In this document: one piece after another, positions 5,528-59,607 of the stretch
Layout: every line of letters starts with the position of its first letter
Position numbering within the stretch: the stretch's first letter is position 1
Source of the DNA: Hydrolagus colliei
Lineage: Eukaryota
DNA: 64,000 bases
Assembly (NCBI GenBank): GCA_035084275.1
Contig: CM068761.1
Location: forward strand, 8,556,001 to 8,620,000
Reading direction: 5' to 3'
Translations under genes and position numbers: made by a program
The notes under the pieces: generated by a model
Database searches by the model: none
The model's input: only the letters and a program-made list of their open reading frames with translations
What the model was told of the DNA's origin: nothing

Positions 5528-5869
5528 GAACAACCGCAGCTGTTACCCTGACTCAGCCACCGTCCATCTCAACCTCCCCGGGAAACACCGTCAAGATCAC
5601 CTGTACCATGTCCGGAGGCAGCATCGGCAGCTACCACACGAGCTGGTACCAGCAGAAGCCTGGCAGCGCCCCTGTGTTTGTTTGGTATGAGAGCTCCACC
5701 AGAGGTCAGGGGATTCCTGATCGATTCACTGGTTCTGTGGACTCATCGAACATATATTTAACCATCAGCGGTGTGCAGCCGGAGGACGCCGCCGATTATT
5801 ACTGTGGTGCTAAACAAAGCGGCAGCAATCCCCTCATCTTTGGTAAAGGGACCAAGCTGAGTTTGAAAA
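5528..5869 (+). pseudogene. IGLV: Ig lambda/type II germline-joined VJ exon, cluster 1 (open frame; no leader or promoter)
   Basis: Acceptor tttctccag; [44 protein letters not shown]...[24 protein letters not shown]; donor gtaggt; no RSS between V and J. Confidence 0.92.
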
Positions 5870-7984
5870 GTAGGTGATCTTGTTTCAACATTGGATTATT
5901 ATTGTGATCTAATTCTCCTACAGTTTCCACAAAAATAACAAGAACAACGTTGCTCTTGTACAGAGCCTTTCAGGTCAGGAGGACGTCCAAAAATATTCGT
6001 ATGTTTGTCTGTATTCGATATTATTTCACAAGCTATCTGTGATATTCGCACCTGGTTAAAACCCTCGCAATGATAATGTGGAGATCGGAAGTTTTGAAGA
6101 ACCTAAAACACGCCAAACCTGATTTTAATTGAAAATCTGTGAAGAATTTCGACTAATAGTACAGCAAACTAACAAAGGTAAAAAGGTGGAGGCAGGAATG
6201 AAATTATCCAAGAGGAGATAATCGTGGTGATATTTATCTTTAACAGTCTGAAGGACTAAAGATGTCAGATTCACTGTAGCACCGCTTAGAGACCCTGGTA
6301 AAGAATGAGCTACACCAGGGAAAAGAGTTCACACTTCACACCTGAGATTGAAGTTAAATCTCTTTGTGCCAGATTATTTAATTTCTATTTTTACCTGTTA
6401 ACCTCTTTCCCCAGTTTTTCTCCCATCATAAGGAGATCAACAGTATGTTTCCATCTGGTGACTGTCGCTGTTGTATAATGGACCGATTGGTGAGCGGTTC
6501 AATCTCAGAGGGAATCGGATTCCATGAAAATAGTATTCGTCTGTGACTAATTAATCATTTTGAAAAATTAAACTTCTTTGAGAGTGAGGAACATTATATG
6601 TAACTGATAGATGGATGATAGAGTACAACTGTAGGGGACTTTGTTCTCAACATCATTACGCATTCAAATCTAAACCAATATTTTCAGAATAATTCTTATG
6701 TTGCCGTCTGCTCCATGTTATTGCCATAAACAGTTTTTGCATTTTAATATCTGTTTCATTCCAGAGTACTTTTCGAGTTTCTTCAAATATTTTAGTTTCT
6801 CCCCATTACACCCATTACAATACATTTCTATTTTACCATTTATTGCTCACATTTATCTTCAGATTTCCAATTTTACAAACGTATTATTTTCTCCCAATAC
6901 CGTGGTTGATGTCGCTAAGGGCAGCACCATCGGAGAGACTCAATAATACCATGATTGTCATCACAAGTTGTTGCAGTTGGTCAGATGGGAATCATCGTTC
7001 ATTGAAGACAGAGGCTGAGCCCCGGCTCAATCTGGTCAAAATACATTTTCTCTTTGAAAATTAACTTTATTATTTCCCTCAGGCATCATATTAAAGGGAT
7101 TCCGATTTGTGTGTTGTGATTTGTGTATTGTGATTTGTGTATTATGCGCTATTAATTATGAATTAAAATCAGCAAATACGGTGCCAAATAAATTATTGTG
7201 AAATTTGAAATTAATCGGAAGCCCCGCTCAGCAAAGAATCAAAGATTGGATTCTGATTGTGCTCCTGAAGTGTTTTTAAGTGTAGTTGATGAGAAGGAAA
7301 TCATTGATTTTATTCGTATGTTCAGGTTGTTACTCTCAATACAAACCCTATATGATTAATAATGATATTTCACTGTGCTTTCAATCAGCGGCTCCCGCCA
7401 CATACTCCTTGTGTCGCGATGTTTAGTGTCTGGTGTTATTTCTTATGATAGTTGGTATTCATTACTTCAACACAGGACAATTTGTACATGTGTTCACCAC
7501 TGCAAAAAACCATGTAATAAATTGGTCAGTTGAATCCACGAATTCTTGTGGGACAATGCTGTGCGCAATTCGCTGCCGTGTTTCGCCGAAATATGTACAG
7601 ACAATTCACTTCATGGTATATTTTGCGAACATTGAGACGCCGAGAAGACATCAAGAGCACTGTATCAAATGCGAGGATTATTATCATTATTACTGGTAAT
7701 CTCTCATCAGGAAACTATTGATGGTATAATAATGAATGGTGTGTGATGGTGTATGATGACCCCAACACCCATTCTTCCCTCTACATTGCTACACTTTGTC
7801 ACAATTGAAAAGTACCGTCTAAAACGCTGCACAAGAAAACGTTTTACCATTTACAGGAATGTGAAATACTGCATAGCGTTATTTATTGGTGATGCTGAAG
7901 TTTTGTCGTGCTATTGACCAATCGATTGTATATGATATTGGAAAAAAAAAAATTTAAACCTTTGTATCCACATTTTTGTTGCAG

Positions 7985-8307
7985 ACCGACGGGGCCCTTC
8001 GGTGACTATCCTTCCGCCGTCACCAGATCAAATCACAGCAAAGAGCAAGGCGACCCTGGTGTGTCTGGTGAATGATTTTACCCCGGGAGCTGTGGAGGTC
8101 AAGTGGACTGTGGATGGCAGTGCTAGAAGTGAAGGTGTTGAAACGAGTGCGATCAAGCAGGAGATGAACAATACGTACAGTGTGAGCAGTTATCTGACTC
8201 TGCCAGCCTCCGAGTGGGAGTCACACGAGCTGTATTCCTGTCTGGTCAAACACGAGGCTCGGGGGACTCCGCTCGAAAGAACCATCGCCAGATCTAGTTG
8301 TATCTAA
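7985..8307 (+). CDS. IGLC: Ig lambda constant exon, cluster 1 (intact frame, orphaned)
   Basis: Acceptor ttgttgcag; PSVTILPPSPDQITAKSKATLVCLV...YSCLVKHE...RSSCI*; AATAAA at 8612-8617. Confidence 0.93.
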
Positions 8308-9504
8308 ATTAGGAACATATAGAGTAACTTTGGCAATAACATTAAGAATAAGAATTCTGTTAATGATTGTTTGGAAATTAAAGTAATTTTGTCAGCAATG
8401 CCAAAATTGAGAAACAAATTCGATTAAATACCTCCGGTAAATTTCCAACGGATGGAAAGAATCTCTTAAAGTTATAAGTAGGGTATTACAATACGGCAAC
8501 AATAATTTGTCTGTTTGTTGGAATTCAACGGTTGTACTTTACAGTATGTTCACGCTGCAATAATTAAGCCCCCCCTGTGTAACATTACATGAATAAGAAA
8601 TACTATGTTTTAATAAAATGATTATTTCATTGCCCTATGTGCCATGGCTATTGTTCTTCATTTCTTCTTTTCATTTCATTATTATTTTATCTGAAACACG
8701 AATTTGATCTTATCAATTAAACATGCAAGCAGTACTTATATGCGTTTGAAATTTATGTAGTAGAATTTTGGAAACATCTTAATCTTGGTCGCTGCTGGGG
8801 AGCCTTTTCCCGTTGTTAAAAAGAACCATCCGTCAAAGTAAACTCAGCATCAATTAAAGTTAAAGTGAATTCAAGATATCGCACAATATTCAGTGTTAAC
8901 TCATGATTGTTGTTACAAGCTGAGCACGTGTGAAATGCTCTCCCCAACAATGCTATACATCCATCTTGGGTTTGGAAGATAACTCATTGAGATACTTTTG
9001 CCCCTTGCCCCTCCAGCCCGCCGTTCTCTATAGAACTAAATCAAAGTATTACTCAAGTGCTTCACTCGATCATTATGCTGAGCTTTTGTTTTGTCAAAAG
9101 GAGTGACAACCTATTGAAAGGTTATATGACCATCAGATGCAAATGAAACATCAAAATGTACCCACTCCAAAGAGCTCATTGTAGAGTTCCTCCCCTCCCC
9201 ACAACGTGGCCAGTGAGCTCCAAGCCTGCGGTTGAGTACCGTACCAACTTCCGCATTGCAGCCTTTTAACACCCGCAGGTGTCTCTGCAGTTTCCTTCAG
9301 TCGTTTAAGCTGCTGTCAGTTCTAGTCAATATGTTCACTTCATTGGAAAACATTAAATCGGTGCGATGTAACTATCAAATAGGACTGTTCTTTGTTGGTC
9401 GATATCAAAACAAGTTTAATGGTTGAAATGGAACTATAGTAAGAGGTAGCTGGACAACGACTTGTATGGAATATACCAATCGCAGCTGGTACTGATGTCA
9501 TCGA

Positions 9505-10379: not shown

Positions 10380-13130
10380 ACAACAGCAAAATTATTTTGA
10401 TAGAGTGCCTTTCATGTCAGGAGGATGTCGCAAGGCGCTGAACAATTAGATCATGTCCGATCGGGTAAAGGTGTGGGGGGTGTGGGGTGTCGTGGCAAGA
10501 GCGTAGGAAAGGTGGGAGAGTTTGGAGGGGTGGAGAAGGCACGATCGAAGAGGAAGCTGTTGAGACTGGTGTTAAAGGAGGAAAGGGAGGAAGAGAGGCG
10601 AACGGGTTGCAGGATGGAATTCCAGAGTGTGGGACAGAGTGGCTGAAAGCCCGGCCACCGATGGTAGGTCAGTTTTGGGCGGGGGACATGGAGCAGGAAA
10701 GAGTCCGCTAAATGGTGGGGATGGGCAGGCTGATAGGGAAGCAGTAGTTTGGAAAGATAGGTGGGCGCAAGGCCATGAATGGCCTTGAAAGTGAGGGCGA
10801 GGATCTGGAATTTAACCCTATTGAAGATGAGGAGCCAGTGGAGTTGGGCGAGGGTGGGAGTGATGTGGTCACAGAGCCTAGTGCAGGAGAGTCCACGAGC
10901 TGCAGATTTCTGAATAATCTGCCGTAGGGGAGCCTAGATGTGATGAAAGCGTGGATGAGTGTTTCAGCAGCATGGGGGGTGAGGTAGTGGCGGAGAAGGT
11001 GGAAGTCTGTACTGGTCATGGCGCGGATTTGGGGGAGGAAGGATAGTTTGCAGTGGAACAAGCTACCCAGATTGCTGACTGGTTTCAAGAGGTGGAGAGT
11101 GCAGCCTTGAATGCCGATGTTGCCAGCACCTGAGGTGCTGAGGCGCAGACGCCAGTGAATCAGGATGGCCTCTGTTTGTTGATGTTTAGTTGGAGGAATT
11201 TGTCCCTTGACCGGGACTAAATGTTGGACAGACATGCAGTCAGAATGCTATTAATCCTGGAGTTGAGGGTGGAAGCGGAAAGGTAGAGTCGGGTGTCATC
11301 CGCACACATGTGGAAATGTACCACATATCAGAGTATGATGTCACCGAGGGTGAAGGAAGCATGTAGATGGTGAGGAGCAGGGGGCCAAGAACAGTGGATG
11401 CCACATGTGACTGTACAAGGGCTGGAGGAAAAGCCGTTAGGGGAGAAAAACTGAAAGCTGTGTGAGACATGTTGCTGGAACTAATCAAGAACAGACCCTT
11501 GAAAATTGAGGAGGGAAAAGAGGCGGGAGAGGAGAATTGCATGGTCAATGGTGTCAAAGGCAGTGGATAAATTGAGGAGGACGAGGAGGCAGAGGGAGGC
11601 CTGGTCACAGATGGTCAGGTTGTCATTTGTGCCCTTGACCAGAGCAGTTTCCCACCCCGATTGGAGGTGTACGAAAAGTGATTGGGTTGAGTGGAAAGAG
11701 TGGAACTGTGAAGAAACACCTCTTTCGCTGACCTTAGACAGGAAAGGGAGAATGGAGATGGGCAGGTAACTCGAGAGCTGCAACATATTGAGAGACGTTT
11801 TCTTTAGGATGGGGGTGATAGTGGCAGATTTGACGTGAGTAGGAATGGTGCCAGATGAAAGTTGGCAGGTTAATGGTGTCGGCAATTCGTGGGGCTAGAA
11901 GGTGGAGCTGAGTGGTAAGAAGAGGGGTTTGGATGGGGTCAAGGGAGCAGGTGATGTGATTGATGGAGTCGATGGTTTTTGTGATGGAGGATGGGGATAT
12001 GGTATGGAATGCGTGGAAGGAGGGATGGTTAGGAGACAGGATTTGGGGGGAGGTGACAATGGGGTGGAAGTTGGAGGGACGGTGAATCGCAGAGCAGATT
12101 TCCTCAATTTTAGACTCAAGGAAATCCAGCATCTCCTCGCAGCGGGAGTTCGAGGAAAGGATATGTGAGGCAACGTGAGGCAGTGGGCGGGAGGACAGGA
12201 AAACAGTGAGTGGATGGAAGATCTGGTTGTTGTTGGAGAAAAGCATTCAGGGTTTGTACTTCGCCTCCAGGATTATTCTGGAGGAGAAGGACTATTTGGT
12301 GGAGGCTACAGTGGAGTGGTACGATGAAGTGAGGTCCAGCCAGATGTGCCATTGGTCAGTTAGGCGGGATTTGAGCCAGGTGCGTCAGTGGCCCCCATCT
12401 GGCCCTTGAGGAAATGGAGGTGAGTGGTGAACCAGATTGATGTTCGGAAGTAGTAGGCAGTTTGGTAGGTGAGGGGGGCAAGTGCTTTGAATGTGGTGGA
12501 GGGGGTTTTGTGGAGGGGAGTAAGTGCAGAGAATGCGTCAGTGCTGAAGGTGTGCCAGAGGGAGAGGAATTTGGAGGACTCTAAGGTAGCAGAGAAAGTT
12601 TGCGGGGGGATCTTCTTCCATGGGCGGTAGAAGATGGCGGTAGGCTTGGGGGTGGAGTGGAGAGTGCTCGGAGATGGCCTTGTTGGTGATCGTGAAATCA
12701 GAGAAACTGAAGCTCAGGGTGATCACCAAGTTAAACCGGTGGTCGTGAATGTGTGTGGCGGAGTGGATGTAGAGGGAGGGGTTGAGAGAGGAGAGGAGGG
12801 AGGAGATTTCTGAGGAGGTGGAGTAAGTGAGGGTGAAGTGGAGGTTGATGTCGCCGAGGATGATGAGATGAAATGTGACATCCGATCAGAGGAGGATCAG
12901 CGGTAAACTAGGAGTGTGGAGAATTCAGAGGTGAAGGTTTGGGAGGTGACTAAATATAAAAATAAGATAAAAAGGCCATTAAGAAAACACTGACTGGAGT
13001 TGGTTGATGTGGTCATTGCAAACACACTCTGGGGATGCGCACAAGAGGCAGGTAATCCCGCCTCTTCATCTGAATGACTCCGTCCCCTCCCACTCACTGA
13101 TCACATCCACCATCTCCAGTAAGTATTCCC
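10380..13130 (-). mobile_element. Long degenerate L2 LINE (endonuclease + RT)
   Basis: Fragments include LLVLLNLSTAFDTIDHAILLSRL, SATITPILKK, TCSLDPIQTPLL, and EN-like FHLIILGDINLH; 3' tail near 10380. Confidence 0.85.
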
Positions 13131-13369
13131 TTAATAGTATTTAGTATCTTATTTATATATTTACCAAATAACTAATATAAAATTTAGTCAGCTAATATCG
13201 CTTCAATTAATCCAATTGCTAATTATTTTTTCTAGCTATTTATTAATTCGTCAACGACGTATAATCGAAACAACCTATATTGAGACATATAGCGAGGAGT
13301 GCCCGTATATACGTGAGTAAAACAAGGCAGCACGTTACACACAGGTGTAGCACACAAACCGCTGGATTT

Positions 13370-13520
13370 AAATGACTACTTTATGGTTTTTTTAAGGGAT
13401 TGTTAGGTATGTGTTGTAAAAAACTTGCCCAATGTTTCGCCCTTCCTGGAATTGAGTCAAATTCTCTCACTTTTAAGTCATGTGCTCTATCCACTGAGTT
13501 ACTAGACTCCTCAGTTGAAG
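13370..13520 (-). mobile_element. tRNA-derived SINE head
   Basis: Minus strand reads ggagtctagtaactcagtggatagagcac...gactcaattccagg, with A/B-box-like motifs; paralogs near 18890 and 40570. Confidence 0.6.
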
Positions 13521-13769
13521 GGTCCTCAGGCATCCATCAGTATATTTATTATAATGATGATAATAGGATGCGGCGCCAATTCATGCAGATAGATGGATAA
13601 TCTGTAATAAACCAGACATTAGAATACAAAATAGATAGTAAATGTAGCAGAACATGTGTGGCTTTAATATGTGCTGACAACATAAGAAATAAGGAACTAG
13701 GGAAGATGAGGAACCATATCGATCTGGAAATGGAATGTGGAAGACATGTTGCAGTACAAATCAAACATA

Positions 13770-14045
13770 AATCCTATAGTTGAATGTTTAGAGCACTTGC
13801 CACACAAGCAAATGATCCGGTTTCAATTCCAGATAGGGCGCAATCTTGAGCAAGTTTCCATACACCATATGGCTCATCCCTCAAAAGAGGGAATCATAAA
13901 TTGCTCACTTCAATCTGCGACTGTTTGTGGGACACTGGTGATATGTTTCGCCGATATATATTCACTATTTTTTGATAGATATCGGTCATTGTGTAAAGCG
14001 CTTTGAGACGTCTAGAAGATGAAAGGATTGGTATTATTACTTAGG
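13770..14045 (+). mobile_element. tRNA-derived SINE with L2-like tail
   Basis: tRNA-like head, core ctgtttgtgggacactg, tail aagcgctttgagacgtc..gtgaaagg; paralogs at ~19760 and ~41035. Confidence 0.6.
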
Positions 14046-15059
14046 ATTTGTTTTAGTCGTCCATAAATATTTCCAAAGGAATAGCAACAATTTGTTGCGT
14101 TTTGTTTTGGTTTGATGCATCTGCAATCATCTGGAAATCTTTGCATTGACAGCAATATTCTTAGACAATCAGAATAATCCATGTTTGTGATATTCGTGAA
14201 TGTTTGAGTGGAAATGATACCTGTGCCTTTTGAAGTAAAAATTCATAATTCAGTATGAATTTAACAGGGTGACAATTTCGTCAAATTTTAAAATACCACA
14301 ATAATCGGGTACATTTTGCCACATGTTGGATTTCTACCCAAGCTTCTGATAGATCAGATGTGGGAAGATTCAGGCGACGAACACTCAATCTGTGGAGGGC
14401 GCTGTCTCACAATAAATAAATACATAGCTTCACTCTCACTGAGGCAACAATTTTAAATGACTGTCAGTTTGAATTTCATAGCTTATATGAAATCTACTCA
14501 GGTTGTTGCTACTTGTAGTGTCTGTTTTTGTAGCCTAATACAGTGCTTGTTTTGCAGCAGCAAAATCACTCAACAAATGAAAAACAAAAATGGTAAATAA
14601 TCTTATGTACAGTTATTCCTGGCTCCAAGACAAACTTTCTTTCACTTTCCATTCATTAATTCCATGGAAACTCTGATATCCACCTGAGCAATCAACAATT
14701 TCAATTAGCATCATATTGTAAAAATCTAATCTCACAAACTGAAGTGAAGTGATTGCAGTGTTTGCCCTAGATATGCCGATAAAAAGCATGACAGGTGTTC
14801 AATTTTAATTATGATTCTATCAATAATTCATTATAGGTTATCGTAATTGGTGCCTACAGAGTGACTATCAATATTACCACATTCCTGTCTATCACAGAGC
14901 CTGACTTCCAATGTACATCACCATGATGGCAGTGAAATCCTCAGTCCTTGCCTTTGAGAATTGATGTTTGTGATGTTGAGACGGTTCAAGGGCAATGTAC
15001 TTCAGACTATCACATTTAGTTAATTTGATGGAATGTGCTCCACCATAGTACAAGGCAAT

Positions 15060-15780
15060 AATAACGAAAGACAAACGCAAGAACACATTGCAATTATGCA
15101 TCATGTTGCATATTGGGAGTATGCACCAAAACTCGTCATGCTTGCTTTGATTGGATTGAAATTGGGATGGGTGGAAGCATGACCAAGGCACGGTGAAAGA
15201 GAAAGTACTTTAGATGAGATTTCAAGGAGGGAAGGCAGGGCAAGTGAAGTGTTTCCTCGTCAGTGTTCCCAAGGAGTATAGCCAAAACATGTTGAAGGCC
15301 TTTCATGAGGAATGCAAGCATGATATTTCTCGGCAGCGTGAGTGAAGAGGCAATGGCCGTGTTGTTCCATGTAATGGAAGTGTGGGAATGCAGAACTGTG
15401 GGTGGCATCCATATTGGGATAAGGAAAGATCAGCCTCGGGGCTTTGTACAAGCTATGGGCGGTGAAAAATGAATCTGTTAATAGTGTCATTGTCAGTTCG
15501 TTGGGTGAGGAATTGCAGGCTGCCTTTACATTGTCAACTTTAAACTGGAGAAAATTAGCCATTATTCAGGGCTTGATCACTGAAGATGGCAGGAAATACA
15601 TTGAGAGATATGGAGGAACAGCTTGAACACATATTTATTTGTAAACAACAACAACAAAATACAATTTCTATAGCGCCTTTCACATAGGGAGGATGTCCCA
15701 AGGCACTGACCAGTCAGGTAGGGACCAGAGCGGGGAGCAGGGGTCAGGGTAGAAGGAAGAGAATAAGAGAAGTGACTGTA
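15060..15780 (-). mobile_element. Old L2 RT C-terminal fragment plus SINE/LINE tails (part of the spacer unit)
   Basis: NFLQFKVDNVKA...DATHSS..HFH resembles L2 RT-end motifs. Paralogs at 20610-21380, 31070-31860, 42310-42880 and 52390-53000. Confidence 0.6.
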
Positions 15781-15849
15781 TATTTGTGAGCAAAACACAG
15801 CAGCAAAAATTGCGCCCAGCAGTGTCTCACGAATAATCGTGGGATTGGG

Positions 15850-16385
15850 TTTAGGGGAGAAAGGTGGAAAAGAGCATAATTGGGGAGAGGGAGGGAAAGG
15901 TGGGGTGAGGTAACGTCGGGGAGGAAAAGGGTAGGAGAAAGGGGGGTAAGGTGTCGATGGAGGAAAAGGTGGTGGGGGGGTTACAATCAGGGAGAAATGG
16001 GGGAAGTAAGGGGGTTAAGGGGAAATAGGGAGGGAAGGGATAAAATGTGGAGAGGGAAAGAATGGGGGAAAAGGGACCAGTTGGATGGAAGAGGGAGAAG
16101 AGAGGGAGGAAAGATAGGGAAGTAAGGTTGGAAGAGAGGGAGGGGAAAGAAAGTGAAGCGGATAGAGAGGGTAGAGTTGAAAGAGCGAGAGGAAGGAAAG
16201 GGGGGGAAGAGTGGGTGAAAAGAAGGATGAAAGAGAGGCAATGAAAGAGGGAAGTAAAGAGGAGTGGGGTGTAGAACATTGAAATGGCAAAGAAGAGAGG
16301 TAAAAGGGGAGGAGAGAAAGGAGGAAAGGTAGCGAGGGAAGAAAAGGGGTGAAAGTTTAGAGGTCAAAAGAGGGTGATTAATTAA
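15850..16385. repeat. Purine-rich (G/A) low-complexity tract
   Basis: About 0.5 kb almost entirely G/A on +; paralogs at 21400-21920, 31860-32370 and 53300-53800. Confidence 0.9.
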
Positions 16386-16414
16386 TGGCAACAAAAATAA
16401 CAATAACAATAATG

Positions 16415-16560
16415 AAGTCCTTGAGCTCGCCACTACTTGTCCTCGCCATCTGCCTGGACGATGTACGTAAGGTGGAACTGGACGTAGGTGAAGTGGGAGG
16501 AGACGGCCAACAGTGATGCGTTGAACATCTCCTGCTCGGCCTCCAGCCGCTGCAGTTTCT
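16415..16560 (-). pseudogene. RUNDC1: RUNDC1-like N-terminal coding fragment, copy 1
   Basis: EKLQRLEAEQEMFNASLLAVSSHFTYVQFHLTYIVQADGEDK*, recognised from memory of RUNDC1 (EQELLNSSLLALTSHFAQVQFRL). Confidence 0.65.
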
Positions 16561-16607
16561 ATGGGATTTGTCCTAGTGTAGTGACATGCCCCAAACCAAC
16601 CGGCTCC

Positions 16608-16890
16608 TCAGCTGGTGTACTTGGTGATGGCCATGATGCTCTCGGACACGGCATGGTTGGCCAGCTCACCCAGCAGCAGCAGCCTGACCGCCATCTAGAT
16701 CTCCCGCGATGAGATGGTCTGCCACTTGCTATACTAGATCAGGTAATAGGCCTCGCAGGCGATCCACTGAAAGATGTCATTGAAGAACGAGTTCACACAT
16801 TCATGGCCGACGATGGGTGGACCTGTTTCAGCACCTTGTACATGTATGAGGTGTAACTGTGTCCTGCGCTTGCGGTAGTGGCGTCTAACC
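16608..16890 (-). pseudogene. H2B: Divergent histone H2B pseudogene, copy 1
   Basis: [15 protein letters not shown]...[49 protein letters not shown]; stops and indels. Confidence 0.9.
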
Positions 16891-17556
16891 CTGCTGTTTG
16901 TCCGCTGCCAGCGCCTTTTTCAGGGACCATCAAAGTGGTCAGCGGCTTGGGATGTCTTTCTGATGTGAAAGTTGCTCTATAGATGTAATTTTGTTGTTGT
17001 TGTTCAGTCCCATATTTCTATGTTCTGTTGATAAATTTGATGAGTTTAATCAAAATAATGCTAACTATGATAATGATACCTGGGCTAAATCATTTGCTGA
17101 CTTTAAACAAAATCCAATTATGACTACATGTCACATGAAGAAGCAAACGCTTTGTATCCTGTCCAGCAATGACACAAGTAAAATTAGCATTGATTTCAAT
17201 GACCATCATGGCCGAGAAACTGTAAGATATTAAAATGCACAAATTTGCTTCCACATTTACCTAAATAATATACGCAATATATCCAGTAAAGCATCACTTG
17301 AAATGAAAAGTCATCATTAAATGAAAGGTACTTTCTCAAAGGGATTATTATTTATTTCATTTTTAATACACTACAAGTGAGAGGTTTTTTTTATTGATGG
17401 TCACTTTGGATTTCTAAGCATGAGAAAATCACTTGACCTTGATCTGTCAAAAACATGCATTGGATCATCGCATGCGAAGACTTCCATAAAAGTGAGTTTT
17501 CAAATTTGAAGAATTGAGTGTATCACCTTCTGAAATGCACTGGTGTGTATGTCCTA

Positions 17557-18560
17557 TCCAGCATCTCCTCACAGTGGGAGTTAGAGGAAAGGACCTGCGA
17601 GGCAAGGCAAGGTGGTGGGTGGGGGGACGGGGACGACAATGGGGGGATGGAGGATCTGGTTGGTGGTGGAGAAAGGAAGCCGGGGGTTGTACTTCACCTC
17701 CAGGATTATCATAGAGAAGAAGGACAATTTGGTGGAGGCTGGAGAGGAGCCTAGAATGGAGCGGTAGGGCAAAGTGAGGTACAGCCATATATGCCAGTGG
17801 ACCGTTAAGCGGGATTTGAAACAGGTGCTTTCAATGGCCCGCACCTGGCCCTTGAGGGAACGGAGGTTCGTGGTGAACCAGGGTGAGGTTCGGGAGCAGG
17901 AGGCATTCAGTAGGTGAGGGGGACAAGCACGTCATGTGGTGGAGAGGGTATTGTGGAGGAGAGTGAGTGCAGAGGATAGGTCAGTGCTGAGGGTGGCCAG
18001 AGGGAGAGGAGTTTGGAGGCAAGCAGAGAACGTTTATGGGGGGATCCTCTGCCATGGCCGGTAGAAGATGGTGATTTCTTGGGGTGGAGGGGAGAGTGAT
18101 TGGAGATGGCCTTGTTGGTGATAGTGAGATCGGAGACACTGAAGCTCAGTGTGATCACCAAGTTAAACGAGTGGCCGTGAACGTGTGTGGCGGAGTGGAT
18201 GTGGATGGAGAGGTTGAGAGAGGAGAGGAGGGAGGAGAATTCTGAGGAGGTGGAGCAAGCAGCGGTGAAGTAGAGGTTGATGTCGTCGAGGATGATGAGA
18301 TGAAACGTGACATCTGATCGGAGCAGGCGCAGAGGTAAGCTAGGAGTGTGGAGAAGTCAGAGATGAAGGATTGGGAGAGTCAGTGCTGGAGGTGATAAAA
18401 TGTAGAAATAAGATAAAAAGGCAATTAAGAGAACACTGACAGGAGATGGTTGATGTGGTCATTGCAAACACACTTTTGGGATCCGCACAAGAGGCAGGTA
18501 ATCCTGCCTCTTCATCTGAATGACCCCTCCCCTCACTGATCACATCCACCATCTCCAGTA
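17557..18560 (-). mobile_element. Duplicated 5' (endonuclease) part of the L2 at 12124-13130
   Basis: Colinear with 12124-13130; joined at 17556/17557 to spacer sequence. Confidence 0.8.
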
Positions 18561-21957: not shown

Positions 21958-22112
21958 ATGAAGACCTTGAGCTCACAACTCCTTTTCCTCACCATCTGCC
22001 TGGACGATCTGTTTGAGGTGGAACTGGAATTGGGTGTAGTGGGAGGTGAGGGCCAACAGTGATGAGTTGAACACTCCTGCTCGGACTCCAGCCGCTGCAG
22101 TTCCTCGGCCAT
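21958..22112 (-). pseudogene. RUNDC1: RUNDC1-like fragment, copy 2
   Basis: MAEELQRLESEQE then a frameshift, FNSSLLALTSHYTQFQFHLKQIVQADGEEKE...ELKVF. Confidence 0.65.
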
Positions 22113-25087: not shown

Positions 25088-25200
25088 CATCTGCTGTTCA
25101 GAACAATGATTCCTATTGGACGATGGAAGCCGGAGGAGAATTTGCATAAATTGTGAATTCAACTGGACTTGCATCACCTGATGGTTCTTAAGGACAAGTC
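25088..25200 (+). promoter_or_regulatory. Ig V promoter, cluster 2: E-box CATCTG, ATTGG (CCAAT), octamer ATTTGCAT (25140-25147), E-box CACCTG
   Basis: Perfect Ig octamer ~125 bp upstream of the ATG; same motif order in clusters 4 and 5. Confidence 0.85.
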
Positions 25201-25272: not shown

Positions 25273-25321
25273 ATGGGCGATTGGCTCCGAGTTCTGGCCA
25301 CTTTGCTCCTGTGTCTGCATG
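25273..25321 (+). CDS. IGLV: Ig leader exon, cluster 2
   Basis: MGDWLRVLATLLLCLH-G, donor gtaag. Confidence 0.92.
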
Positions 25322-25463: not shown

Positions 25464-25820
25464 GAACAACCGCAGCTGTTACGCTGACTCAGCCACCGTC
25501 CATCTCAACCTCCCCGGGAAACACCGTCAAGATCACCTGTACCATGTCCGGAGGCAGCATCGGCAGCTACTACACGAGCTGGTACCAGCAGAAGCCTGGC
25601 AGCGCCCCTGTGTTTGTTTGGTATGAGTACAGTAGTAGCTCCATCAGAGGTCAGGGGATTCCTGATCGATTCACTGGTTCTGTGGACTCATCGAGCAACG
25701 CCATGCATTTAACCATCAGCGGTGTGCAACCGGAGGACGCCGCCGATTACGACTGTGGTGTCTGGTATAGCACCAGCTATCCCTTCATCTTTGGTACAAG
25801 GACCAAGCTGATTTTGAAAA
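25464..25820 (+). CDS. IGLV: Germline-joined VJ exon, cluster 2
   Basis: 357-nt open exon; CDR3 [13 protein letters not shown]; atypical YDC and FGTRT. Confidence 0.92.
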
Positions 25821-27845: not shown

Positions 27846-28168
27846 ACCCACGGGCCCCCTCGGTGACGGTCCTTCCGCCGTCACCAGATCAAATCACAGC
27901 TAATTGCAAGGCGACCCTGGTGTGTCTGGTGAATGATTTTAACCCGGGAGCTGTGGAGGTCAAGTGGACTGTGGATGGCAGTGCCAGAAGTGAAAGTGTT
28001 GAAACGAGTGCGATCAATCAGGAGGTGGACAACACTTACAGTGTGAGCAGTTATCTGACTCTGCCAGCCTCCGAGTGGGAGTCACACGAGCTGTATTCCT
28101 GTCTGGTCACACACGAGACTCGGGGGACTCCGCTCGAAAAAACCATCGCCAGATCCAGTTGTATCTAA
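27846..28168 (+). CDS. IGLC: Constant exon, cluster 2
   Basis: Acceptor gttccag; open frame to RSSCI*; extra Cys (ITANCK); AATAAA at 28481. Confidence 0.93.
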
Positions 28169-34589: not shown

Positions 34590-34629
34590 TGGCTCCGAGT
34601 TCTGGCCGCTTTGCTCCTGTGTCTGCATG
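34590..34629 (+). pseudogene. IGLV: Leader-exon remnant, cluster 3 (ATG and promoter deleted, fused to a SINE head)
   Basis: tggctccgag...ctgcatg|gtaag is preceded directly by a tRNA-SINE head (34531-34589); in-frame TGA at 34563, no in-frame ATG. Confidence 0.9.
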
Positions 34630-34755: not shown

Positions 34756-35100
34756 GAACAACCGCAGCTGTTACCCTGACTCAGCCACCGTCCATCTCAA
34801 CATCCCCGGGAAACACCGTCAAGATCACCTGTACCATGTCCGGAGGCAGGATCGGCAGCTACTACACGAGCTGGTACCAGCAGAAGCCTGGCAGCGCCCA
34901 TGTGTTTGTTTGGCGTGATTATGACTCCACCAGAGGTCAGGGGATTCCTGATCGATTCACTGGTTCCGTGGACTCATCGAGCAACGCCATGCATTTAACC
35001 ATCAGCGGTGTGCAGCCGGAGCACGCTGCCGATTACTACTGTGGTGGGTGGGATAGCAACAGCTTCACCTTTGGTAAAGGGACCAAGCTGAGTTTGAAAA
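34756..35100 (+). pseudogene. IGLV: Germline-joined VJ exon, cluster 3
   Basis: Open 345-nt exon; CDR3 CGGWDSNSFTF. Confidence 0.92.
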
Positions 35101-35605: not shown

Positions 35606-35829
35606 GATCTAAATTGATAGTCTGTGAATAATTTCGACGGATAAAACAGAATAATAAGAAAATGTAGAAATCTGGAGGAAGGAATGAAATTAGACAAGAG
35701 GAGTTAATCGTGGTGATATTTATATTGAACAGTCTGAAGGACTTAAAATGTCAGATTCACCGTAGCATCGTTTAGAGATCCTGGTGAAGAATGAGCTACA
35801 CCAGGGAAATTGGTTAACACTTCACACCT

Positions 35830-36042
35830 GAGTTCAAGTGGACTGTGGATGGCAGTCCCAGAAGTGAAGGTGTTGAAACGAGTGCGATCAAGCAGGAGGT
35901 GGACAACACGTACAGTGTGAGCAGTTATCTGACTCTGCCAGCCTCCGAGTGGGAGTCACACGAATTGTATTCCTGTCTGGTCAAACACGAGACTCGGGGG
36001 ACTCCGCTGGAAAAAACCATCGCCAGATCCAGTTGTATCTAA
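35830..36042 (+). pseudogene. IGLC: 5'-truncated constant exon, cluster 3
   Basis: Intron acacctGAG is joined to GAG-ttcaagtggactgtg; acceptor and the first C-domain Cys are lost. Confidence 0.92.
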
Positions 36043-46800: not shown

Positions 46801-46910
46801 CATCTGCTGTTCAGAACAAGGATTCCTATTGGACGATGGGAGCCGGAGGATAATTTGCATAATTTATGATTTCAACTGGACTTGCATCACCTGATGGTTC
46901 TTAAGGAGAA
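46801..46910 (+). promoter_or_regulatory. Ig V promoter, cluster 4 (octamer 46853-46860)
   Basis: CATCTG, ATTGG, ATTTGCAT, CACCTG in conserved order. Confidence 0.85.
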
Positions 46911-46984: not shown

Positions 46985-47033
46985 ATGGGCGATTGGCTCC
47001 GAGTTCTGGCCGCTTTGCTCCTGTGTCTGCATG
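46985..47033 (+). CDS. IGLV: Ig leader exon, cluster 4
   Basis: MGDWLRVLAALLLCLH-G, donor gtaag. Confidence 0.93.
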
Positions 47034-47140: not shown

Positions 47141-47488
47141 GAACAACCGCAGCTGTTACCCTGACTCAGCCACCGTCCATCTCAACCTCCTCGGGAAACA
47201 CCGTCAAGATCACCTGTACCATTTCCGGAGGCAGCATCGGCAGCTACACGAGCTGGTACCAGCAGAAGCCTGGCAGCGCCCCTGTGCTTGTTTGGTATCA
47301 CTATGGTAGTAGCTCCGCCAGAGGTCAGGGGATTCCTAATCGATTCACTGGTTCTGTGGACTCATCGAGCAACGCCATGCATTTAACCATCAGCGGTGTG
47401 CAGCCGGAGGACGCCGTCGATTACTACTGTGGTGGCTGGTATAGCAGCAGCTTCATCTTTGGTAAAGGGACCAAGCTGAGCTTGAAAA
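47141..47488 (+). CDS. IGLV: Germline-joined VJ exon, cluster 4 (likely functional)
   Basis: Open 348-nt exon with both Cys, Trp and FGKGT; CDR3 CGGWYSSSFIF. Confidence 0.93.
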
Positions 47489-49050: not shown

Positions 49051-49373
49051 ACCCACGGGCCCCCTCGGTGACTGTCCTGCCGCCGTCACCAGATCAAATC
49101 ACAGCAAAGAGCAAGGCGACCCTGGTGTGTCTGGTGAATGATTTTACCCCGGGAGCTGTGGAGGTCAAGTGGACTGTGGATGGCAGTGCCAGAAGTGAAG
49201 GTGTCGAAACGAGTGCGATCAAGGAGGAGGTGGACAACACGTACAGTGTGAGCAGTTATCTGACTCTGCCAGCCTCCGAGTGGGAGTCACACGAGCTGTA
49301 TTCCTGTCTGGTCAAACACGAGACTCGGGGGACTCCGCTCGAAGGAACCATCGCCAGATCTAGTTGTATCTAA
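49051..49373 (+). CDS. IGLC: Constant exon, cluster 4
   Basis: Acceptor tcttccag; NPRAPSVTVLPPS...RSSCI*; AATAAA at 49682. Confidence 0.94.
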
Positions 49374-50576
49374 ATTAGGAACATATAGAGCTAGTAGAAT
49401 TTATCTTTGGTAATCTACATTAAGAATTGTGTCAATGATTTTTTGGAAATTAAATTAATTTTGTCAGGAACGCCCAAATTGAGAAACAAATTCGATTAAA
49501 TACCTGCGGTAAATTTCCATCAGAAGGAATGAAGCTGTTATATTTTTAAGTAGAGTATTACAATACGGCAACAATAATTTGTCTGTTTGCTGGAATTGAA
49601 TGGTTGTACTGTACAGTGTGCGAACGCTGCAATAATGAAGCCCCCTGTGTAACATTACATGAATAAGAAATACTATAGTTTAATAAAATGACTGTTTCAC
49701 TGCCCTCTGTGCCCTGGCTATTTTTCTTCATTTCTTCTTTTCATTACCTAATTATTTTATCTGAAACACGAATTTGATCTGATTAATTAAACATGCAAGC
49801 AGTACTTATATGCGTTTGAAATTTGAGTAGTAGAATTTTGGAAACATCTTAATCTTGGTCGCTACTTGGGAGTCTTTTCATTTTGTTGTTAAAAAGAACC
49901 ATCGTTCAAAGTAAACTTAACATCAAATAAATTAAAGTGAATTTAAAATAGCGCAAAATGTTCAATGTTAAATCATAATTGTTGTTACAAGCTGAGCACG
50001 TGTGAAATGCTCTCCCCAACAATGCTGTACATCCACCTTGTGTTTGGAAGATAATTCATTTAGATACTTTTGCCCCCGGCCTCTCCAGCCCGCCAATCTC
50101 TAGAGAACTAAATCAAAGTATTACTCAAGTGCTTCACTCGATCATTATGCTGATCTTTCGTGTTGCCAAAAGGAGTCACAACCTATTGAAAGGTTATATC
50201 AGCATCAGATGCAAATGAAACATCAAAATGTACCCACTCAGAAGAGCTCATTGTAGAGTTACTCCCCTCCCCACCCCGTGGCCAGTGAGCTCCAAGCCTG
50301 CGGTTGAGTAACGTACCAACTTCCGCATTGCAGCCTTTTAACACCCGCAGGTGTCTCTGCAGTTTCCTTCAGTCGTTTAAGCTGCTGTCAATTCTAGTCA
50401 ATATTTTCACTTTATTGCAAACCATTAAATCGGTACGATATAACCATCAAATAGAATTGTTCTTTGTTTGTCGATATAAAAACAAGTTTAATGATTGAAA
50501 TGGAACTATGGTAAGAGGAAGCTGGACAACGACTTGTCTGGAATATACCAATCGCAGCTGGTACTGATGTCATCGA

Positions 50577-56825: not shown

Positions 56826-56935
56826 CATCTGCTGTTCAGAACAAGGATTCCTATTGGACGATGGGAGCCGGAGGATAATTTGCATGAATTGTGAATTCAA
56901 CTGGACTTGCATCACCTGATGGTTCTTAAGGAGAA
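56826..56935 (+). promoter_or_regulatory. Ig V promoter, cluster 5 (octamer 56878-56885)
   Basis: CATCTG, ATTGG, ATTTGCAT, CACCTG. Confidence 0.85.
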
Positions 56936-57009
56936 GTTTACAATCGAGCAGTAAAGTGGCTTTTGTCTGTGAATCACTAATTGCTCAGATCTTCGTCAAA
57001 CTGTTCACA

Positions 57010-57058
57010 ATGGGCGATTGGCTCCGAGTACTGGCCGCTTTGCTCCTGTGTCTGCATG
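57010..57058 (+). CDS. IGLV: Ig leader exon, cluster 5
   Basis: MGDWLRVLAALLLCLH-G, donor gtaag. Confidence 0.93.
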
Positions 57059-57200
57059 GTAAGCGCTGCGGAATCCGCACTGATCTCAATTACCTTCACT
57101 TTGTACAGTTAGTTCTACAGTGTGACCTGTCTACAGTGTGACCTCTCTACAGTGTGACCTATCTACAGTGTGACTTATCTGTGACTTGTTATTTCTCCAG

Positions 57201-57539
57201 GAACAACCGCAGCTGTTACCCTGACTCAGCCACCGTCCATCTCAACCTCCCCGGGAAACACCGTCAAGATCACCTGTACCATGTCCGGAGGCAGCATCGG
57301 CAGCTACACGAGCTGGTACCAGCAGAAGCCTGGCAGCGCCGCTGTGTTTGTTTGGCGTGATTATGGCTCCAGCAGAGGTCAGGGGATTCCTGATCGATTC
57401 ACTGGTTCTGTGGACTCATCGAGCAACGCCATGCACTTAACCATCAGCGGTGTGCAGCCGGAGGACGCTGCCGATTATTACTGTTTTTCCGGGTATAGCA
57501 GCTTCATCTTTGGTAAAGGGACCAAACTGAGTTTGAAAA
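57201..57539 (+). CDS. IGLV: Germline-joined VJ exon, cluster 5 (likely functional)
   Basis: Open 339-nt exon; CDR3 [10 protein letters not shown]. Confidence 0.93.
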
Positions 57540-59607
57540 GTAAGTGATCTTGTTTCGACTTTCAATGATTATTGTGATCTAATTCTCCAAAAGTTTCCAC
57601 AATAATAATAACAACAGCGTTGCTCTTGTACATAGCCTTTCGGGTCAGGAGAACGTCCAAATATTTTGTATGTTTGTCTATATTCAATATTATTTCACAC
57701 GGTTTCTGTGATAGTCGCACCTGGTGAAAATCTTCGGAATGATAAACCTTTTTTTTGGTAATCGCAAATTTTAAACCAAAACTGACCTCAACTGAAAATC
57801 TGTGAAGAATTTCGACGAATATTACAGCAAACTAACCGAGGTAAAAAGGTGGAGAAAGGAAAGAAATTAGCCAAGCGGGGTTAACCGTGGTGATATTTAT
57901 ATTTAACAGTCAGCAGGACTGAAGATGTCAGATTCACTGAAGCACCGCTTAGAGATCCTGGTAAAGAATGAGCCACACCAGGGAAATGAGTTAACACTTC
58001 ACACCTGAGATTGAAGTTAAATCTATTTGTGTCAGATTATTTAATTTCTATATTTACCTGTTAACCTCTTTCCCCAATTTGTCAGCACGAAGTGATATTT
58101 AAAAGAATCTCCATCATAAGGAGATCAACAGCATCTTTCCATCTGATGACTGTCGCTGGGGTCTAATGGACCGATTGCTGAGCGGTTCAATCTCAGAGGG
58201 AACCGGATACCCTGAAAATAGTGTTCGTCCGTGACTAACCGATCATTTTGAAAATTTAAATTTTGTTTGAGAGTGAGGAACACTATGTGTAACTGATATA
58301 TCGATGATAGAGAAGAACTGTAGGGGAGTTTGTTCTAAGCATCATTACGCATTCAAATCGAATCCATTATTGTCAGAATAATTCAAATGTTATAATCTGC
58401 TCCGTGTTATTGCCATAAACAATCTTTGCATTTTAACATTTTTCTATTCCAGATTTCTATTCGGATTTCCTGAAATGTTTTATTTTCTGCCACTAACCCT
58501 TTAAAATAAGTTTATATTTTACCATTTATTGCGCGCATTTATCTTCAGATTTCTAACTTTATAAACGCATTATTTTCTCCCAATTCCGTGGTTGATGTCG
58601 CTAAGGGCAGCACCATTGGAGAGACTCAATAATATCATGGTTTTCACCACAAGTTGCTGCAGTTGGTCACATGGGAATCATCGCTCATTAAAGACAGAGG
58701 CTGAGCGCCGGCTCAATCTGGTCAAAATACATTTTCTCCTTTGAAAATTTACTTTATTATTTCCCTCAGGCATCATATTAAAGGGATTCCGATTTGTGTA
58801 TTGTGATTTGTGTATTGTGCGCTATTAATTATGAATTAAAATCAGCAAATACGGTGCCAAATAAATTATTGTGAAATCGGAAGCTCCTCTATGTAACAAA
58901 TCAAAGATTGGATTCTGATTGTGCTCCTGAATTGGTTTTCAGTGCAGAGTGTTTGGTTAAAAGGAAAACATTTATTTCCTTCCTAGTTTCAGGTTGTTAA
59001 TCTCAATACAAACTCAATACAATTAATAATGATGTTTCACTGAGCTTTCAACAGCAGCTCCCGCCACATACTCCTAGAGACGCGGTATTTAGTGTCTCGT
59101 GTTAGTTCTTATGATAGTAGGTATTAATTACTTCAATACATCACAATATGAACGCGTGTTCCCCACTGCCAAAAACCCTAAAATAAATTGGTCATTTCAA
59201 TCCACGACTGTTTGTGAGACACTGCTGTGCGCAATTGGCTACCTACAGTATATTTTGAGAAATTTGAGACATCAAGAGCACTATATCAAATGCGAGGATT
59301 ATTATCCTTATTATTGTTGAGCTCTGAGCAGCAAACTATTGATAGTATAATAATGAACCGTGTGTGGTGGTGTATGATGACCCCCAACACTTATTGTTCC
59401 CTTCACATTGTTACACTTTGTCACAGTTGAAAAGTACCGTCTAAAACTCTGCACAAGAAAATGTTTTACCATTTTCAGGAATGTGAAATACTGTATAGGA
59501 TTATTTATTGGTGATCCTGAAGTTTTGTGGTGCTATTCAACAGGTCGATTGTAACTTAAAATGTTAAAAAATGAATTTCAATTTTTTTATCTACATTTTT
59601 GTTCCAG

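What the first reader, a model, noticed from the sequence alone, without database searches (positions are those of the whole stretch)
5600..57540. CDR1, CDR2 and CDR3 group the five germline V genes in conflicting ways
Seen: frameworks are nearly identical while CDRs differ, with codon-multiple indels. The short CDR1 (GSYTS) is shared by clusters 4+5. CDR2 WRDY.S. is shared by 3+5, and WY.Y.SSS. by 2+4. CDR3 CGGW.S.SF.F is shared by 3+4, and a longer Pro-containing CDR3 by 1+2. CDRs are rich in AGC/AGT/TAC codons (AID hotspot-type). Inference: a hard-wired repertoire diversified in the germline by segmental exchange (gene conversion or unequal crossover) plus positive selection, replacing RAG junctional diversity.
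Basis: partly seen in the sequence, partly recalled or inferred. Interest (0 to 1): 0.7.

Follow-up and report, generated by a model that had tools for sequence, protein, structure and literature searches.

The report
Pre-joined chimaera lambda light-chain gene array
The window holds five tandem antibody lambda light-chain gene clusters of a chimaera (ratfish relative) whose V and J parts are already fused in the germline, a known shark-type arrangement. The clashing CDR similarities are real, but within these five genes they cannot be told apart statistically from shared ancestry plus recurrent mutation.

Summary
Five + strand VJ exons (5528-5869, 25464-25820, 34756-35100, 47141-47488, 57201-57539) have near-identical frameworks.

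The locus is a holocephalan Ig lambda (type II) array of germline-joined L-VJ-C clusters, which is a known kind. Only c4 and c5 are intact. c2 carries damaging replacements, and c1 and c3 are truncated pseudogene clusters.

- At kb scale the ~10-kb units are clearly mosaic (3SEQ-like p<3e-4; singleton heterogeneity p=8e-13).
- Inside the V exons the conflict is not significant (PHI 0.015-0.10; 3SEQ-like and GENECONV-like tests not significant).
- Two of the five groupings (1+2 in CDR3, 2+4 in CDR2) are retained ancestral states.
- The 4+5 grouping rests on one slippage-prone TAC deletion, and 3+4 on one exon nucleotide plus three intron sites.
- CDR dN/dS is 1.0-1.35 (not significantly above 1) against 0.53 in frameworks.
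- Inter-cluster differences are not enriched at AID hotspots.

The orthologous Callorhinchus milii locus does show CDR-scale exchange. One CDR2 tract is shared by otherwise divergent genes (p=1e-5). A recently diverged pair differs only by six replacement changes, all in CDRs.

The parts
5528..5869 (+). c1 germline-joined VJ exon. Open frame, short FR3 (SSN--IYL), CDR3 [11 protein letters not shown]. No leader exon and no octamer promoter: homology to the other units starts at 5502.
7985..8307 (+). c1 C-lambda exon (open, C1-set)
25140..25147 (+). c2 octamer ATTTGCAT, 133 nt upstream of the ATG
25273..25321 (+). c2 leader exon
25464..25820 (+). c2 VJ exon. Open, but YYC is changed to YDC and the J motif FGKG to FGTR, so the domain is probably impaired. 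Long ancestral-type CDR3 [11 protein letters not shown].
27846..28168 (+). c2 C exon (open; several replacements, including an extra Cys)
34590..34629 (+). c3 leader remnant. The first ~10 nt including the ATG are replaced by unrelated sequence, and no octamer lies upstream.
34756..35100 (+). c3 VJ exon (open frame; conserved Asp of PEDAADYYC changed to His)
35821..36042 (+). c3 C exon remnant. The 5' ~30 codons and most of the J-C intron are deleted, so the cluster is a pseudogene.
46853..46860 (+). c4 octamer ATTTGCAT, 132 nt upstream of the ATG
46985..47033 (+). c4 leader exon
47141..47488 (+). c4 VJ exon (intact)
49051..49373 (+). c4 C exon (intact)
56878..56885 (+). c5 octamer ATTTGCAT, 132 nt upstream of the ATG
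57010..57058 (+). c5 leader exon
57201..57539 (+). c5 VJ exon (intact; closest to the family consensus)
59608..59930 (+). c5 C exon (intact)
56896..57341 (+). Low-divergence tract in c5 coordinates: promoter, leader, leader intron and FR1-CDR1-FR2. Variable sites among c2/c4/c5 are 0-8% per 50 bp here against 25-30% upstream and ~20-28% in the J-C intron.

Best explanation
The window is part of the immunoglobulin lambda (type II) light-chain locus of a chimaera (Holocephali). It holds five tandem ~10-kb clusters, each built as leader - VJ exon - C exon, with V and J already fused in the germline. No RAG joining is therefore needed, and each cluster encodes one fixed CDR3.

Shown:
- Clusters c4 and c5 are complete, with an octamer promoter, leader, VJ exon and C exon.
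- c2 is complete but carries replacements at conserved positions.
- c1 has lost its leader and promoter. c3 has lost its leader ATG and half of its C exon.
- The repeat units have exchanged sequence with one another at kb scale, so no single tree describes them.

Inferred:
- The clashing CDR groupings have three sources. Some are retained ancestral states (the long S-x-Y-P CDR3 and the longer CDR2). Some are recurrent small changes in repeat-rich CDR codons (the TAC-TAC deletion, AGY runs). Some are probably old short-tract gene conversion or unequal crossing-over that moved CDR-sized pieces between clusters, as is directly visible in the orthologous elephant-shark locus.
- The frameworks, promoter and leader intron are held nearly constant by purifying constraint, perhaps with some homogenisation. 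The CDRs drift at about the neutral rate.
- In B cells, further diversity presumably comes from somatic hypermutation aimed at the hotspot-rich CDRs.
For: Identity:
- Pfam gives V-set (E=8e-16) and C1-set (E=2e-27).
- The best protein hits are Hydrolagus colliei (85%) and Callorhinchus milii (82%) Ig light chains, followed by shark and ray 'lambda-1 light chain-like' proteins.
- The reading frame runs continuously through the J motif to a GT donor.
- C. milii has the same joined clusters in tandem.

Gene integrity.

Unit-level mosaicism:
- 764 singletons against 76 informative sites, split 32/29/15 over the three possible quartets.
- Lineage-specific singletons are heterogeneous along the unit (chi2=137, df=39, p=8e-13; the first of the 14 bins includes c1 sequence upstream of its homology start, which inflates c1's count there).
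- A 3SEQ-like test gives p<3e-4 for several triplets.

Polarisation with C. milii:
- C. milii genes carry AGC ACC AGT CCG TAT CCC TTC, close to the c2 CDR3, and a 7-residue CDR2 like that of c1.
- The same TAC/CAC CDR1 difference separates c1 from c2 and also Cm07 from Cm09, so the change recurs.

CDR-scale exchange in the sister locus:
- Cm04 and Cm10 are identical at 28 consecutive polymorphic sites over codons 48-64, yet differ at 51 of 87 sites elsewhere. The permutation p is 1e-5, about 9e-4 after correcting for 91 pairs.
- Cm10 and Cm12 share a ~2% divergent background with clustered patches of difference, one of them in CDR3.
- Cm07 and Cm09 differ at 6 nt, all replacements and all in CDRs.

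Constraint: the promoter, leader and leader intron are conserved across species, whereas the J-C intron is 25-50% divergent. Framework omega is 0.53 and CDR omega 1.0-1.35.
Against: - Inside the window's V exons no exchange tract is statistically demonstrable. PHI gives p=0.015-0.10 depending on window size. The lowest 3SEQ-like p is 0.10 and the lowest GENECONV-like p, with indels coded, is 0.18.
- The number of informative sites is only about twice what parallel hits on a star tree would give (my estimate from branch lengths).
- The low 5' divergence, which first looked like a conversion tract, is largely matched by cross-species conservation of the same region. Homogenisation is therefore not required. 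Only a modest contrast remains: variable sites are 9 in the window against 38 in C. milii for the 5' half, and 12 against 12 in FR3 (p=0.012).
- The evidence from C. milii shows what this locus type can do. It does not show what happened to these five genes.
- Expression, and use of somatic hypermutation, were not and could not be tested.
Confidence: 0.6

Rival explanations
1. Pure divergence after tandem duplication, with no exchange inside the V exons. The five genes radiated almost at once (a star tree). The clashing CDR similarities are retained ancestral states plus parallel mutation and replication slippage in a small, repeat-rich CDR alphabet (Ser AGY, Tyr TAY, Gly).
For: - The units are star-like, with 764 singletons against 76 informative sites.
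- The local tests are not significant.
- The 1+2 and 2+4 groupings are ancestral states.
- The 4+5 grouping is one deletion within a TAC TAC repeat.
- The identical TAC-to-CAC change recurs in C. milii between near-identical genes.
- CDR omega is about 1.
Against: - The 3+5 grouping rests on a complex character: CGT GAT instead of TAT GAG, a 6-nt indel and a synonymous FR3 site. That is six sites where about one is expected per pair.
- It clashes with four to five 3+4 sites running from CDR3 into the intron.
- PHI is borderline.
- The same units are demonstrably mosaic at kb scale.
- The sister locus shows CDR-sized exchange.
Confidence: 0.28
2. The different CDR3s are fossil junctions. Each cluster, or each small group of clusters, was joined separately by RAG activity in germ cells, as proposed for nurse-shark NS4 genes. 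CDR3 length and sequence differences would then be frozen junctional diversity rather than later exchange.
For: - Germ-cell RAG joining is the accepted origin of joined shark Ig genes (PMC2193156).
- CDR3 differences include codon-multiple length changes at the V-J border, namely the presence or absence of TAT CCC / AAT CCC.
Against: - The junction sequence TAT CCC TTC of c2 is shared with C. milii Cm12, and c1 has AAT CCC CTC. The join therefore predates the split of the two chimaera lineages.
- All 12 C. milii genes sampled and all five window genes are joined, with homologous sequence immediately 3' of J.
- CDR1 and CDR2 conflicts cannot come from V-J joining.
Confidence: 0.06
3. Assembly artefact: the tandem ~10-kb repeats were mis-joined or collapsed, creating chimeric units.
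For: Tandem repeats that are 80-90% identical are hard to assemble, and mosaic relationships are what chimeric joins would produce.
Against: - The window has no N runs.
- No two units share long identical stretches that switch abruptly. Divergence between any two units is 8-20% almost everywhere outside the conserved blocks, i.e. the promoter-to-FR2 tract and the C exons.
- The same organisation is seen in an independent species' assembly.
Confidence: 0.03

Closest known systems
Germline-joined lambda (type II / NS3) light-chain clusters of cartilaginous fishes (sandbar shark, skate, horned shark, ratfish, nurse shark)
   Same: Same L-VJ-C cluster unit, with V fused to J in the germline and multiple tandem clusters. 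Proteins are 65-85% identical. Reviews state that all lambda genes are joined in every species studied (PMC5192425, PMC4279169).
   Different: This is another holocephalan species: the best hit is 85% identical and no identical protein is in the database. Two of the five clusters are truncated pseudogenes. The cluster-to-cluster CDR mosaic is not discussed in the papers I could read.
Nurse-shark NS4 (kappa-like) germline-joined genes made by RAG activity in germ cells (Lee et al. 2000, PMC2193156)
   Same: VJ fused in the germline; some copies are pseudogenes; RAG-independent expression is possible.
   Different: NS4 joined genes are a ~10% minority among split genes and look recently joined, with junction footprints. 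Here every copy is joined and the junction is shared with C. milii, so the joining is ancient.
Chicken and rabbit Ig diversification by gene conversion from pseudo-V donors
   Same: One framework with diversity concentrated in CDRs. There are promoter-less, leader-less V copies (c1, c3) with open frames next to functional genes, and templated CDR-sized patches are seen in the C. milii germline.
   Different: The avian process is somatic and AID-driven and acts on one rearranged gene. Here only evolutionary (germline) exchange is inferred. The pseudo-copies still carry C-exon remnants, so they look like decayed clusters rather than a dedicated donor pool. Nothing somatic could be tested.
Germline V-gene family evolution: birth-and-death with elevated CDR replacement rates (Tanaka and Nei 1989, from memory); gene conversion in the mouse T15 VH family (PMC2187977, known to me only from its title and abstract start); AGY/hotspot codon bias in CDRs (PMC5118421)
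   Same: Frameworks are constrained, CDR pN is four times framework pN, and AGY Ser and WRCY hotspots are concentrated in CDRs.
   Different: CDR3 is germline-encoded here and takes part in the pattern. Omega>1 is not reached in the window.

Membership tests
Cartilaginous-fish Ig lambda (type II) germline-joined light-chain cluster | Cluster unit of leader exon, V(J) exon and a single C exon within a few kb, repeated in tandem | tested here: met
   Five units with ~10-20 kb spacing. L, VJ and C are found by tblastn in order. Units are 80-90% identical to each other.
Cartilaginous-fish Ig lambda (type II) germline-joined light-chain cluster | V and J contiguous in germline DNA, with no intervening sequence or RSS | tested here: met
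   A single open frame runs from FR1 through FG.G..L.LK to a GT donor in all five.
Cartilaginous-fish Ig lambda (type II) germline-joined light-chain cluster | Sequence homology to lambda/type II chains rather than kappa, sigma or sigma-2 | tested here: met
   The top 120 hits are chondrichthyan light chains named lambda, including sandbar-shark lambda. Pfam gives V-set and C1-set. No explicit tree against kappa or sigma was built.
Cartilaginous-fish Ig lambda (type II) germline-joined light-chain cluster | Transcribed and paired with heavy chain in B cells | not testable with these tools
   No expression data are available for this species. C. milii and H. colliei cDNAs of the family exist.
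Germline gene conversion / unequal crossing-over among tandem paralogues | Relationships among copies change along the sequence, with spatial clustering | tested here: met
   This holds at whole-unit scale: chi2=137, p=8e-13; 3SEQ-like p<3e-4; adjacency of like splits p=0.026.
   PHI p=0.015-0.10. 3SEQ-like minimum p=0.10. GENECONV-like with indels, minimum p=0.18.
Germline gene conversion / unequal crossing-over among tandem paralogues | A tract identical between otherwise divergent copies | tested here: not met
   None is found among c1-c5. It is met in the orthologous C. milii locus: the Cm04/Cm10 CDR2 tract, p=1e-5.
Diversifying (positive) selection on germline CDRs | dN significantly greater than dS in CDRs, with dN<dS in frameworks | tested here: inconclusive
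   Window: CDR omega 1.35 pairwise and 1.03 event-based, bootstrap P=0.22; framework omega 0.53. C. milii: CDR2 omega 3.4 (P=0.009; 0.06 without near-duplicates) and all CDRs together 0.97. Cm07/Cm09: 6 replacement and 0 silent changes, all in CDRs.
AID-hotspot / AGY codon bias of Ig V-gene CDRs | WRCY/RGYW and AGY Ser codons enriched in CDRs relative to frameworks | tested here: met
   Hotspot density 0.16 against 0.08. AGY is 32/43 Ser codons in CDRs against 18/49 in frameworks. The paralogues are not independent, so the p-values are inflated.
   With hotspots defined on the consensus: frameworks OR 2.0-2.1, p=0.23-0.26; CDRs OR 1.1-1.2, p=0.76-1.0. The apparent enrichment was an ascertainment artefact.
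Avian-type pseudo-V donor gene conversion system | Somatic, AID-dependent templated replacement of a functional V from pseudo-V donors | not testable with these tools
   c1 and c3 are promoter-less open VJ copies, but no somatic sequences are available.

The most novel reading that the evidence does not exclude
In holocephalans the RAG-independent lambda clusters may be diversified over evolutionary time by templated exchange of CDR-sized cassettes between clusters. Decayed clusters such as c1 and c3, which have no promoter yet keep open VJ frames, would serve as sequence reservoirs. This would be a germline counterpart, or forerunner, of avian pseudo-V gene conversion. It would also explain why synonymous divergence is two to three times higher in CDRs than in frameworks in both species.
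Probability: 0.15. Interest if true: 0.7.

Novelty: new member of a known kind. Interest (0 to 1): 0.38.

Why it matters
Germline-joined lambda genes are the clearest natural case of antibody chains made without V(J) recombination. How such a fixed set of binding sites stays diverse is a fair question. If CDR-sized pieces are shuffled between clusters in the germline, as the elephant-shark CDR2 tract suggests, a family with one framework and many CDRs could be maintained by recombination plus selection long before birds evolved somatic gene conversion. For this window, though, the result is mostly a careful annotation of a known locus type, and a caution that CDR similarity among a handful of paralogues is weak evidence of exchange.

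Tried and rejected
1. Search for same-species paralogues with the VJ open frame as a protein query. It returned no close hits, so the species is not in the protein collection and the search was wasted.
2. Enrichment of inter-cluster differences at AID hotspots. One search looked strongly positive (OR 6, p=7e-5). That was an ascertainment bias, because a variable site has more chances to be a hotspot in at least one gene. With consensus-defined hotspots the effect disappears.
3. A '5' conversion tract' in the window. Promoter, leader, intron and FR1-FR2 are 2-6% divergent against 12-16% in the flanks, with pS 0.021 against 0.109. I first read this as homogenisation. The cross-species alignment shows the same region, intron included, is conserved between chimaera lineages. 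Constraint therefore explains much of it, and only a modest contrast remains (p=0.012).
4. c4+c5 as sister units on the basis of low pairwise distance. Rejected: the 12|45 split is the least supported quartet (15 of 76 sites). The low distance only reflects the shorter branches of c4 and c5.
5. Linking c1 to the C. milii short-FR3 lineage (TCG AAC ------ AT is identical) as proof of exchange. This is suggestive only. Both FR3 lengths are ancient, and CDR3 'types' are too fluid to score reliably.
6. tRNA and Rfam scans of the window found nothing.
7. Older primary papers. Anderson 1995 and Hinds-Frey 1993 are held only as abstract and references. Hohman 1993 is not held. Rast 1994 was not available.

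Full report
WHAT IS THERE

The window has no N runs. Six-frame translation finds five open V-like frames on the + strand that run straight through a J motif. A self-comparison shows they sit in tandem repeat units of about 10 kb that are 80-90% identical.

Each unit contains the following elements:
- A 49-nt leader exon, ATGGGCGATTGGCTCCGAG....
- A short leader intron with a 17-nt minisatellite.
- A VJ exon ending ...[10 protein letters not shown] followed by a GT donor.
- A ~2-kb intron.
- One C exon.

Pfam assigns V-set and C1-set domains. The spliced protein is 85% identical to a Hydrolagus colliei light chain and 82% to Callorhinchus milii light chains. Next come shark and ray proteins named lambda. 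No identical protein is in the collection. The source is therefore a holocephalan other than C. milii, and on the C-terminal residues probably not H. colliei either.

Reviews state that lambda (type II) genes are germline-joined in every cartilaginous fish examined (PMC5192425, PMC4279169). The basic object is thus a known kind.

GENE INTEGRITY

- c4 and c5 have the octamer ATTTGCAT at -132, a leader, a VJ exon and a C exon.
- c2 has all of these parts. However, YYC has become YDC and FGKG has become FGTR, and its C exon carries several replacements.
- c1 is homologous to the other units only from 26 nt before its V exon. Upstream lie retroelement ORFs, and the window contains no leader or octamer for it.
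- c3 has lost the first ~10 nt of its leader, including the ATG, as well as its promoter and the 5' ~30 codons of its C exon.
- tblastn finds no other V or C fragments.

THE OBSERVATION

Indels are codon multiples, frameworks are nearly identical, and CDRs are rich in AGC/AGT/TAC.

IS THE CONFLICT MORE THAN CHANCE?

Whole-unit scale (c1, c2, c4, c5; 4275 ungapped columns). There are 764 singletons and only 76 informative sites, split 32/29/15 among the three quartets. That describes a star-like family with no dominant tree. The mosaic structure is nevertheless real at this scale:
- Lineage-specific singletons are very unevenly distributed along the unit (chi2=137, df=39, p=8e-13). The first bin is inflated by non-homologous c1 sequence.
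- A 3SEQ-like maximum-descent test gives p<3e-4 for several triplets.

The L-VJ-flank region (about 620 columns). There are 18 informative sites and half of all site pairs are incompatible. Formal tests are weak:
- PHI gives p=0.10, 0.05 and 0.015 for windows of 3, 5 and 8 sites.
- No triplet is significant in the 3SEQ-like test (minimum p=0.10).
- A GENECONV-like run test that codes the seven indels gives a minimum p of 0.18.

POLARISING WITH C. MILII

I fetched seven stretches of the C. milii locus. They hold 12 VJ genes, all germline-joined. Nine are intact, one has a SINE inside the V exon, and two are frameshifted.

C. milii genes have the long CDR1, a 7-residue CDR2 like c1, and CDR3s such as AGC ACC AGT CCG TAT CCC TTC, which is almost the c2 CDR3. 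The derived states therefore nest as follows: {2,3,4,5} share the CDR2 insertion, and {3,4,5} share loss of TAT CCC in CDR3.

They carry no grouping signal.

The true conflict is confined to c3, c4 and c5:
- {4,5} rests on one deletion within TAC TAC.
- {3,5} rests on CGT GAT in place of TAT GAG, a 6-nt indel and a synonymous FR3 site.
- {3,4} rests on one CDR3 nucleotide plus three sites in the first 90 nt of the intron.

The {3,5} signal (six sites) exceeds my rough expectation of about one parallel site per pair. The others are borderline.

The same TAC/CAC difference in CDR1 separates c1 from c2 and also separates the near-identical C. milii genes Cm07 and Cm09. Recurrent change at CDR positions is therefore demonstrable.

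SELECTION

Results use the Nei-Gojobori method on a codon alignment with a parsimonious CDR2 alignment.

| Region | pS | pN | omega |
|---|---|---|---|
| Frameworks | 0.067 | 0.036 | 0.53 |
| CDRs | 0.110 | 0.144 | 1.35 |

Counting unique events gives 33 replacement to 8 silent changes in CDRs (omega 1.03) and 16 to 9 in frameworks. A codon bootstrap gives P(pN-pS<=0)=0.22 for the CDRs.

CDRs thus change four times faster than frameworks at replacement sites. That rate is about the same as introns (12-16%). This is what relaxed constraint alone would give.

In C. milii the overall CDR omega is 0.97, with CDR2 at 3.4 (P=0.009; 0.06 after dropping near-duplicates). In both species synonymous divergence is also two to three times higher in CDRs than in frameworks. 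This could reflect older CDR lineages, higher mutability or alignment error.

HOTSPOTS

WRCY/RGYW density is twice as high in CDRs as in frameworks, and AGY Ser codons dominate the CDRs. Both are generic to Ig V genes from sharks to humans (PMC5118421). Inter-cluster differences are not enriched at hotspots once the bias is removed.

THE CONSERVED 5' BLOCK

From about -115 to the end of FR2, the three clusters that have promoters show 0-8% variable sites per 50 bp. Upstream the figure is 25-30%, and in the J-C intron ~20-28%. Synonymous pS is 0.021 in FR1-FR2 against 0.109 in FR3+FR4.

This looked like homogenisation. However, the promoter, leader and even the leader intron are conserved between this species and C. 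milii, whereas the J-C intron is 25-50% divergent or cannot be aligned. Constraint therefore explains much of it.

A residual contrast remains. The 5' half has 9 variable sites in the window against 38 among three C. milii genes, while FR3 has 12 against 12 (p=0.012).

WHAT THE SISTER LOCUS SHOWS

1. Cm04 and Cm10/Cm12 lie about 130-150 kb apart. They are identical at 28 consecutive polymorphic sites covering the end of FR2, all of CDR2 and the start of FR3. Elsewhere they differ at 51 of 87 sites. Within the tract Cm04 differs from its framework relatives Cm03 and Cm01 at 8-10 sites. The permutation p is 1e-5 (N=100,000), about 9e-4 after correcting for 91 pairs. This is a CDR2-sized exchange.
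2. Cm10 and Cm12 share a background of about 2% divergence, with patches of clustered differences. One patch lies exactly in CDR3: CTGG to GGAA, C to T, and GACAT to --CC. Three of the four bases in the first of these changes match Cm04.
3. Cm07 and Cm09 differ at six nucleotides in 349. All six are replacements and all lie in CDR1, CDR2 or CDR3. The flanks differ by about 1.4%. By my own calculation the chance that all six fall in the 27% of the exon that is CDR is about 4e-4.

VERDICT

- Observation: confirmed.
- Interpretation: partly supported.
- Kind: a further member of the known germline-joined lambda cluster family. It has ordinary Ig codon-bias features and a mosaic history best shown at kb scale.
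- Independent germline joining is disfavoured, because the V-J junction is shared across species.
- An assembly artefact is unlikely.

Noticed in passing
window 9137-9144(-), 29009-29016(-), 50209-50216(-), 60755-60762(-); also 9843, 29620, 51003 (+): An octamer ATTTGCAT recurs at the same place about 0.8 kb downstream of the C exon in c1, c2, c4 and c5, and a second one about 1.5 kb downstream in c1, c2 and c4. The first lies in a block that is 91-95% identical between units (c5 60556-60805). This may be a 3' enhancer of each cluster.
   Followed up: partly
window 57110-57190 (c5 leader intron) and equivalents in c2, c3, c4: The leader intron holds a 17-nt minisatellite (CTACAGTGTGACCTATC) with about 4 copies in c2 and c5, about 3 in c3 and about 2 in c4. 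C. milii has a single copy.
   Followed up: partly
window 1614-4373 (-): Retroelement ORFs, including a retroviral aspartyl protease domain (RVP) and a 481-aa ORF with no Pfam hit, lie directly upstream of c1 where its promoter and leader should be. The element probably displaced or deleted them.
   Followed up: partly
window 39085-40152 (+): A reverse-transcriptase ORF (RVT_1), apparently a LINE-like element, lies between c3 and c4.
   Followed up: no
window 12124-17556 vs 17556-23134: A ~5.5-kb internal tandem duplication (82-86% identical) in the c1-c2 spacer explains why that gap is 20 kb rather than 10 kb. The inter-cluster spacers have strong positive GC skew (0.3-0.45) and low-complexity Pro/Ser-rich ORFs on the - strand, so they look like repeat-element debris.
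   Followed up: no
window 34540-34595: The sequence replacing the start of the c3 leader contains a tRNA-like GGTTCGAA box (…GTAGCACAGTGGTTGGAGCAC…GGGTTCGAAC). It may be a tRNA-derived SINE head. ARAGORN and Rfam give no hit.
   Followed up: partly
L002 10226-10487 (C. milii MU249839.1): One C. milii lambda V exon is split between CDR1 and FR2 by a ~260-nt SINE-like insert. The NCBI gene model treats the insert as an intron, giving a full-length predicted protein (P0012).
   Followed up: partly
FR3 of all window and C. milii V genes (e.g. window 57386-57487): FR3 nucleotide sequence is almost as similar between species as between paralogues within a species. c2 differs from Cm01 and Cm02 by 4.9%, against 3.9-6.2% from the other window genes. 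There are no fixed differences between the species anywhere in FR1-FR3. This points to very slow evolution or to trans-species V lineages.
   Followed up: partly
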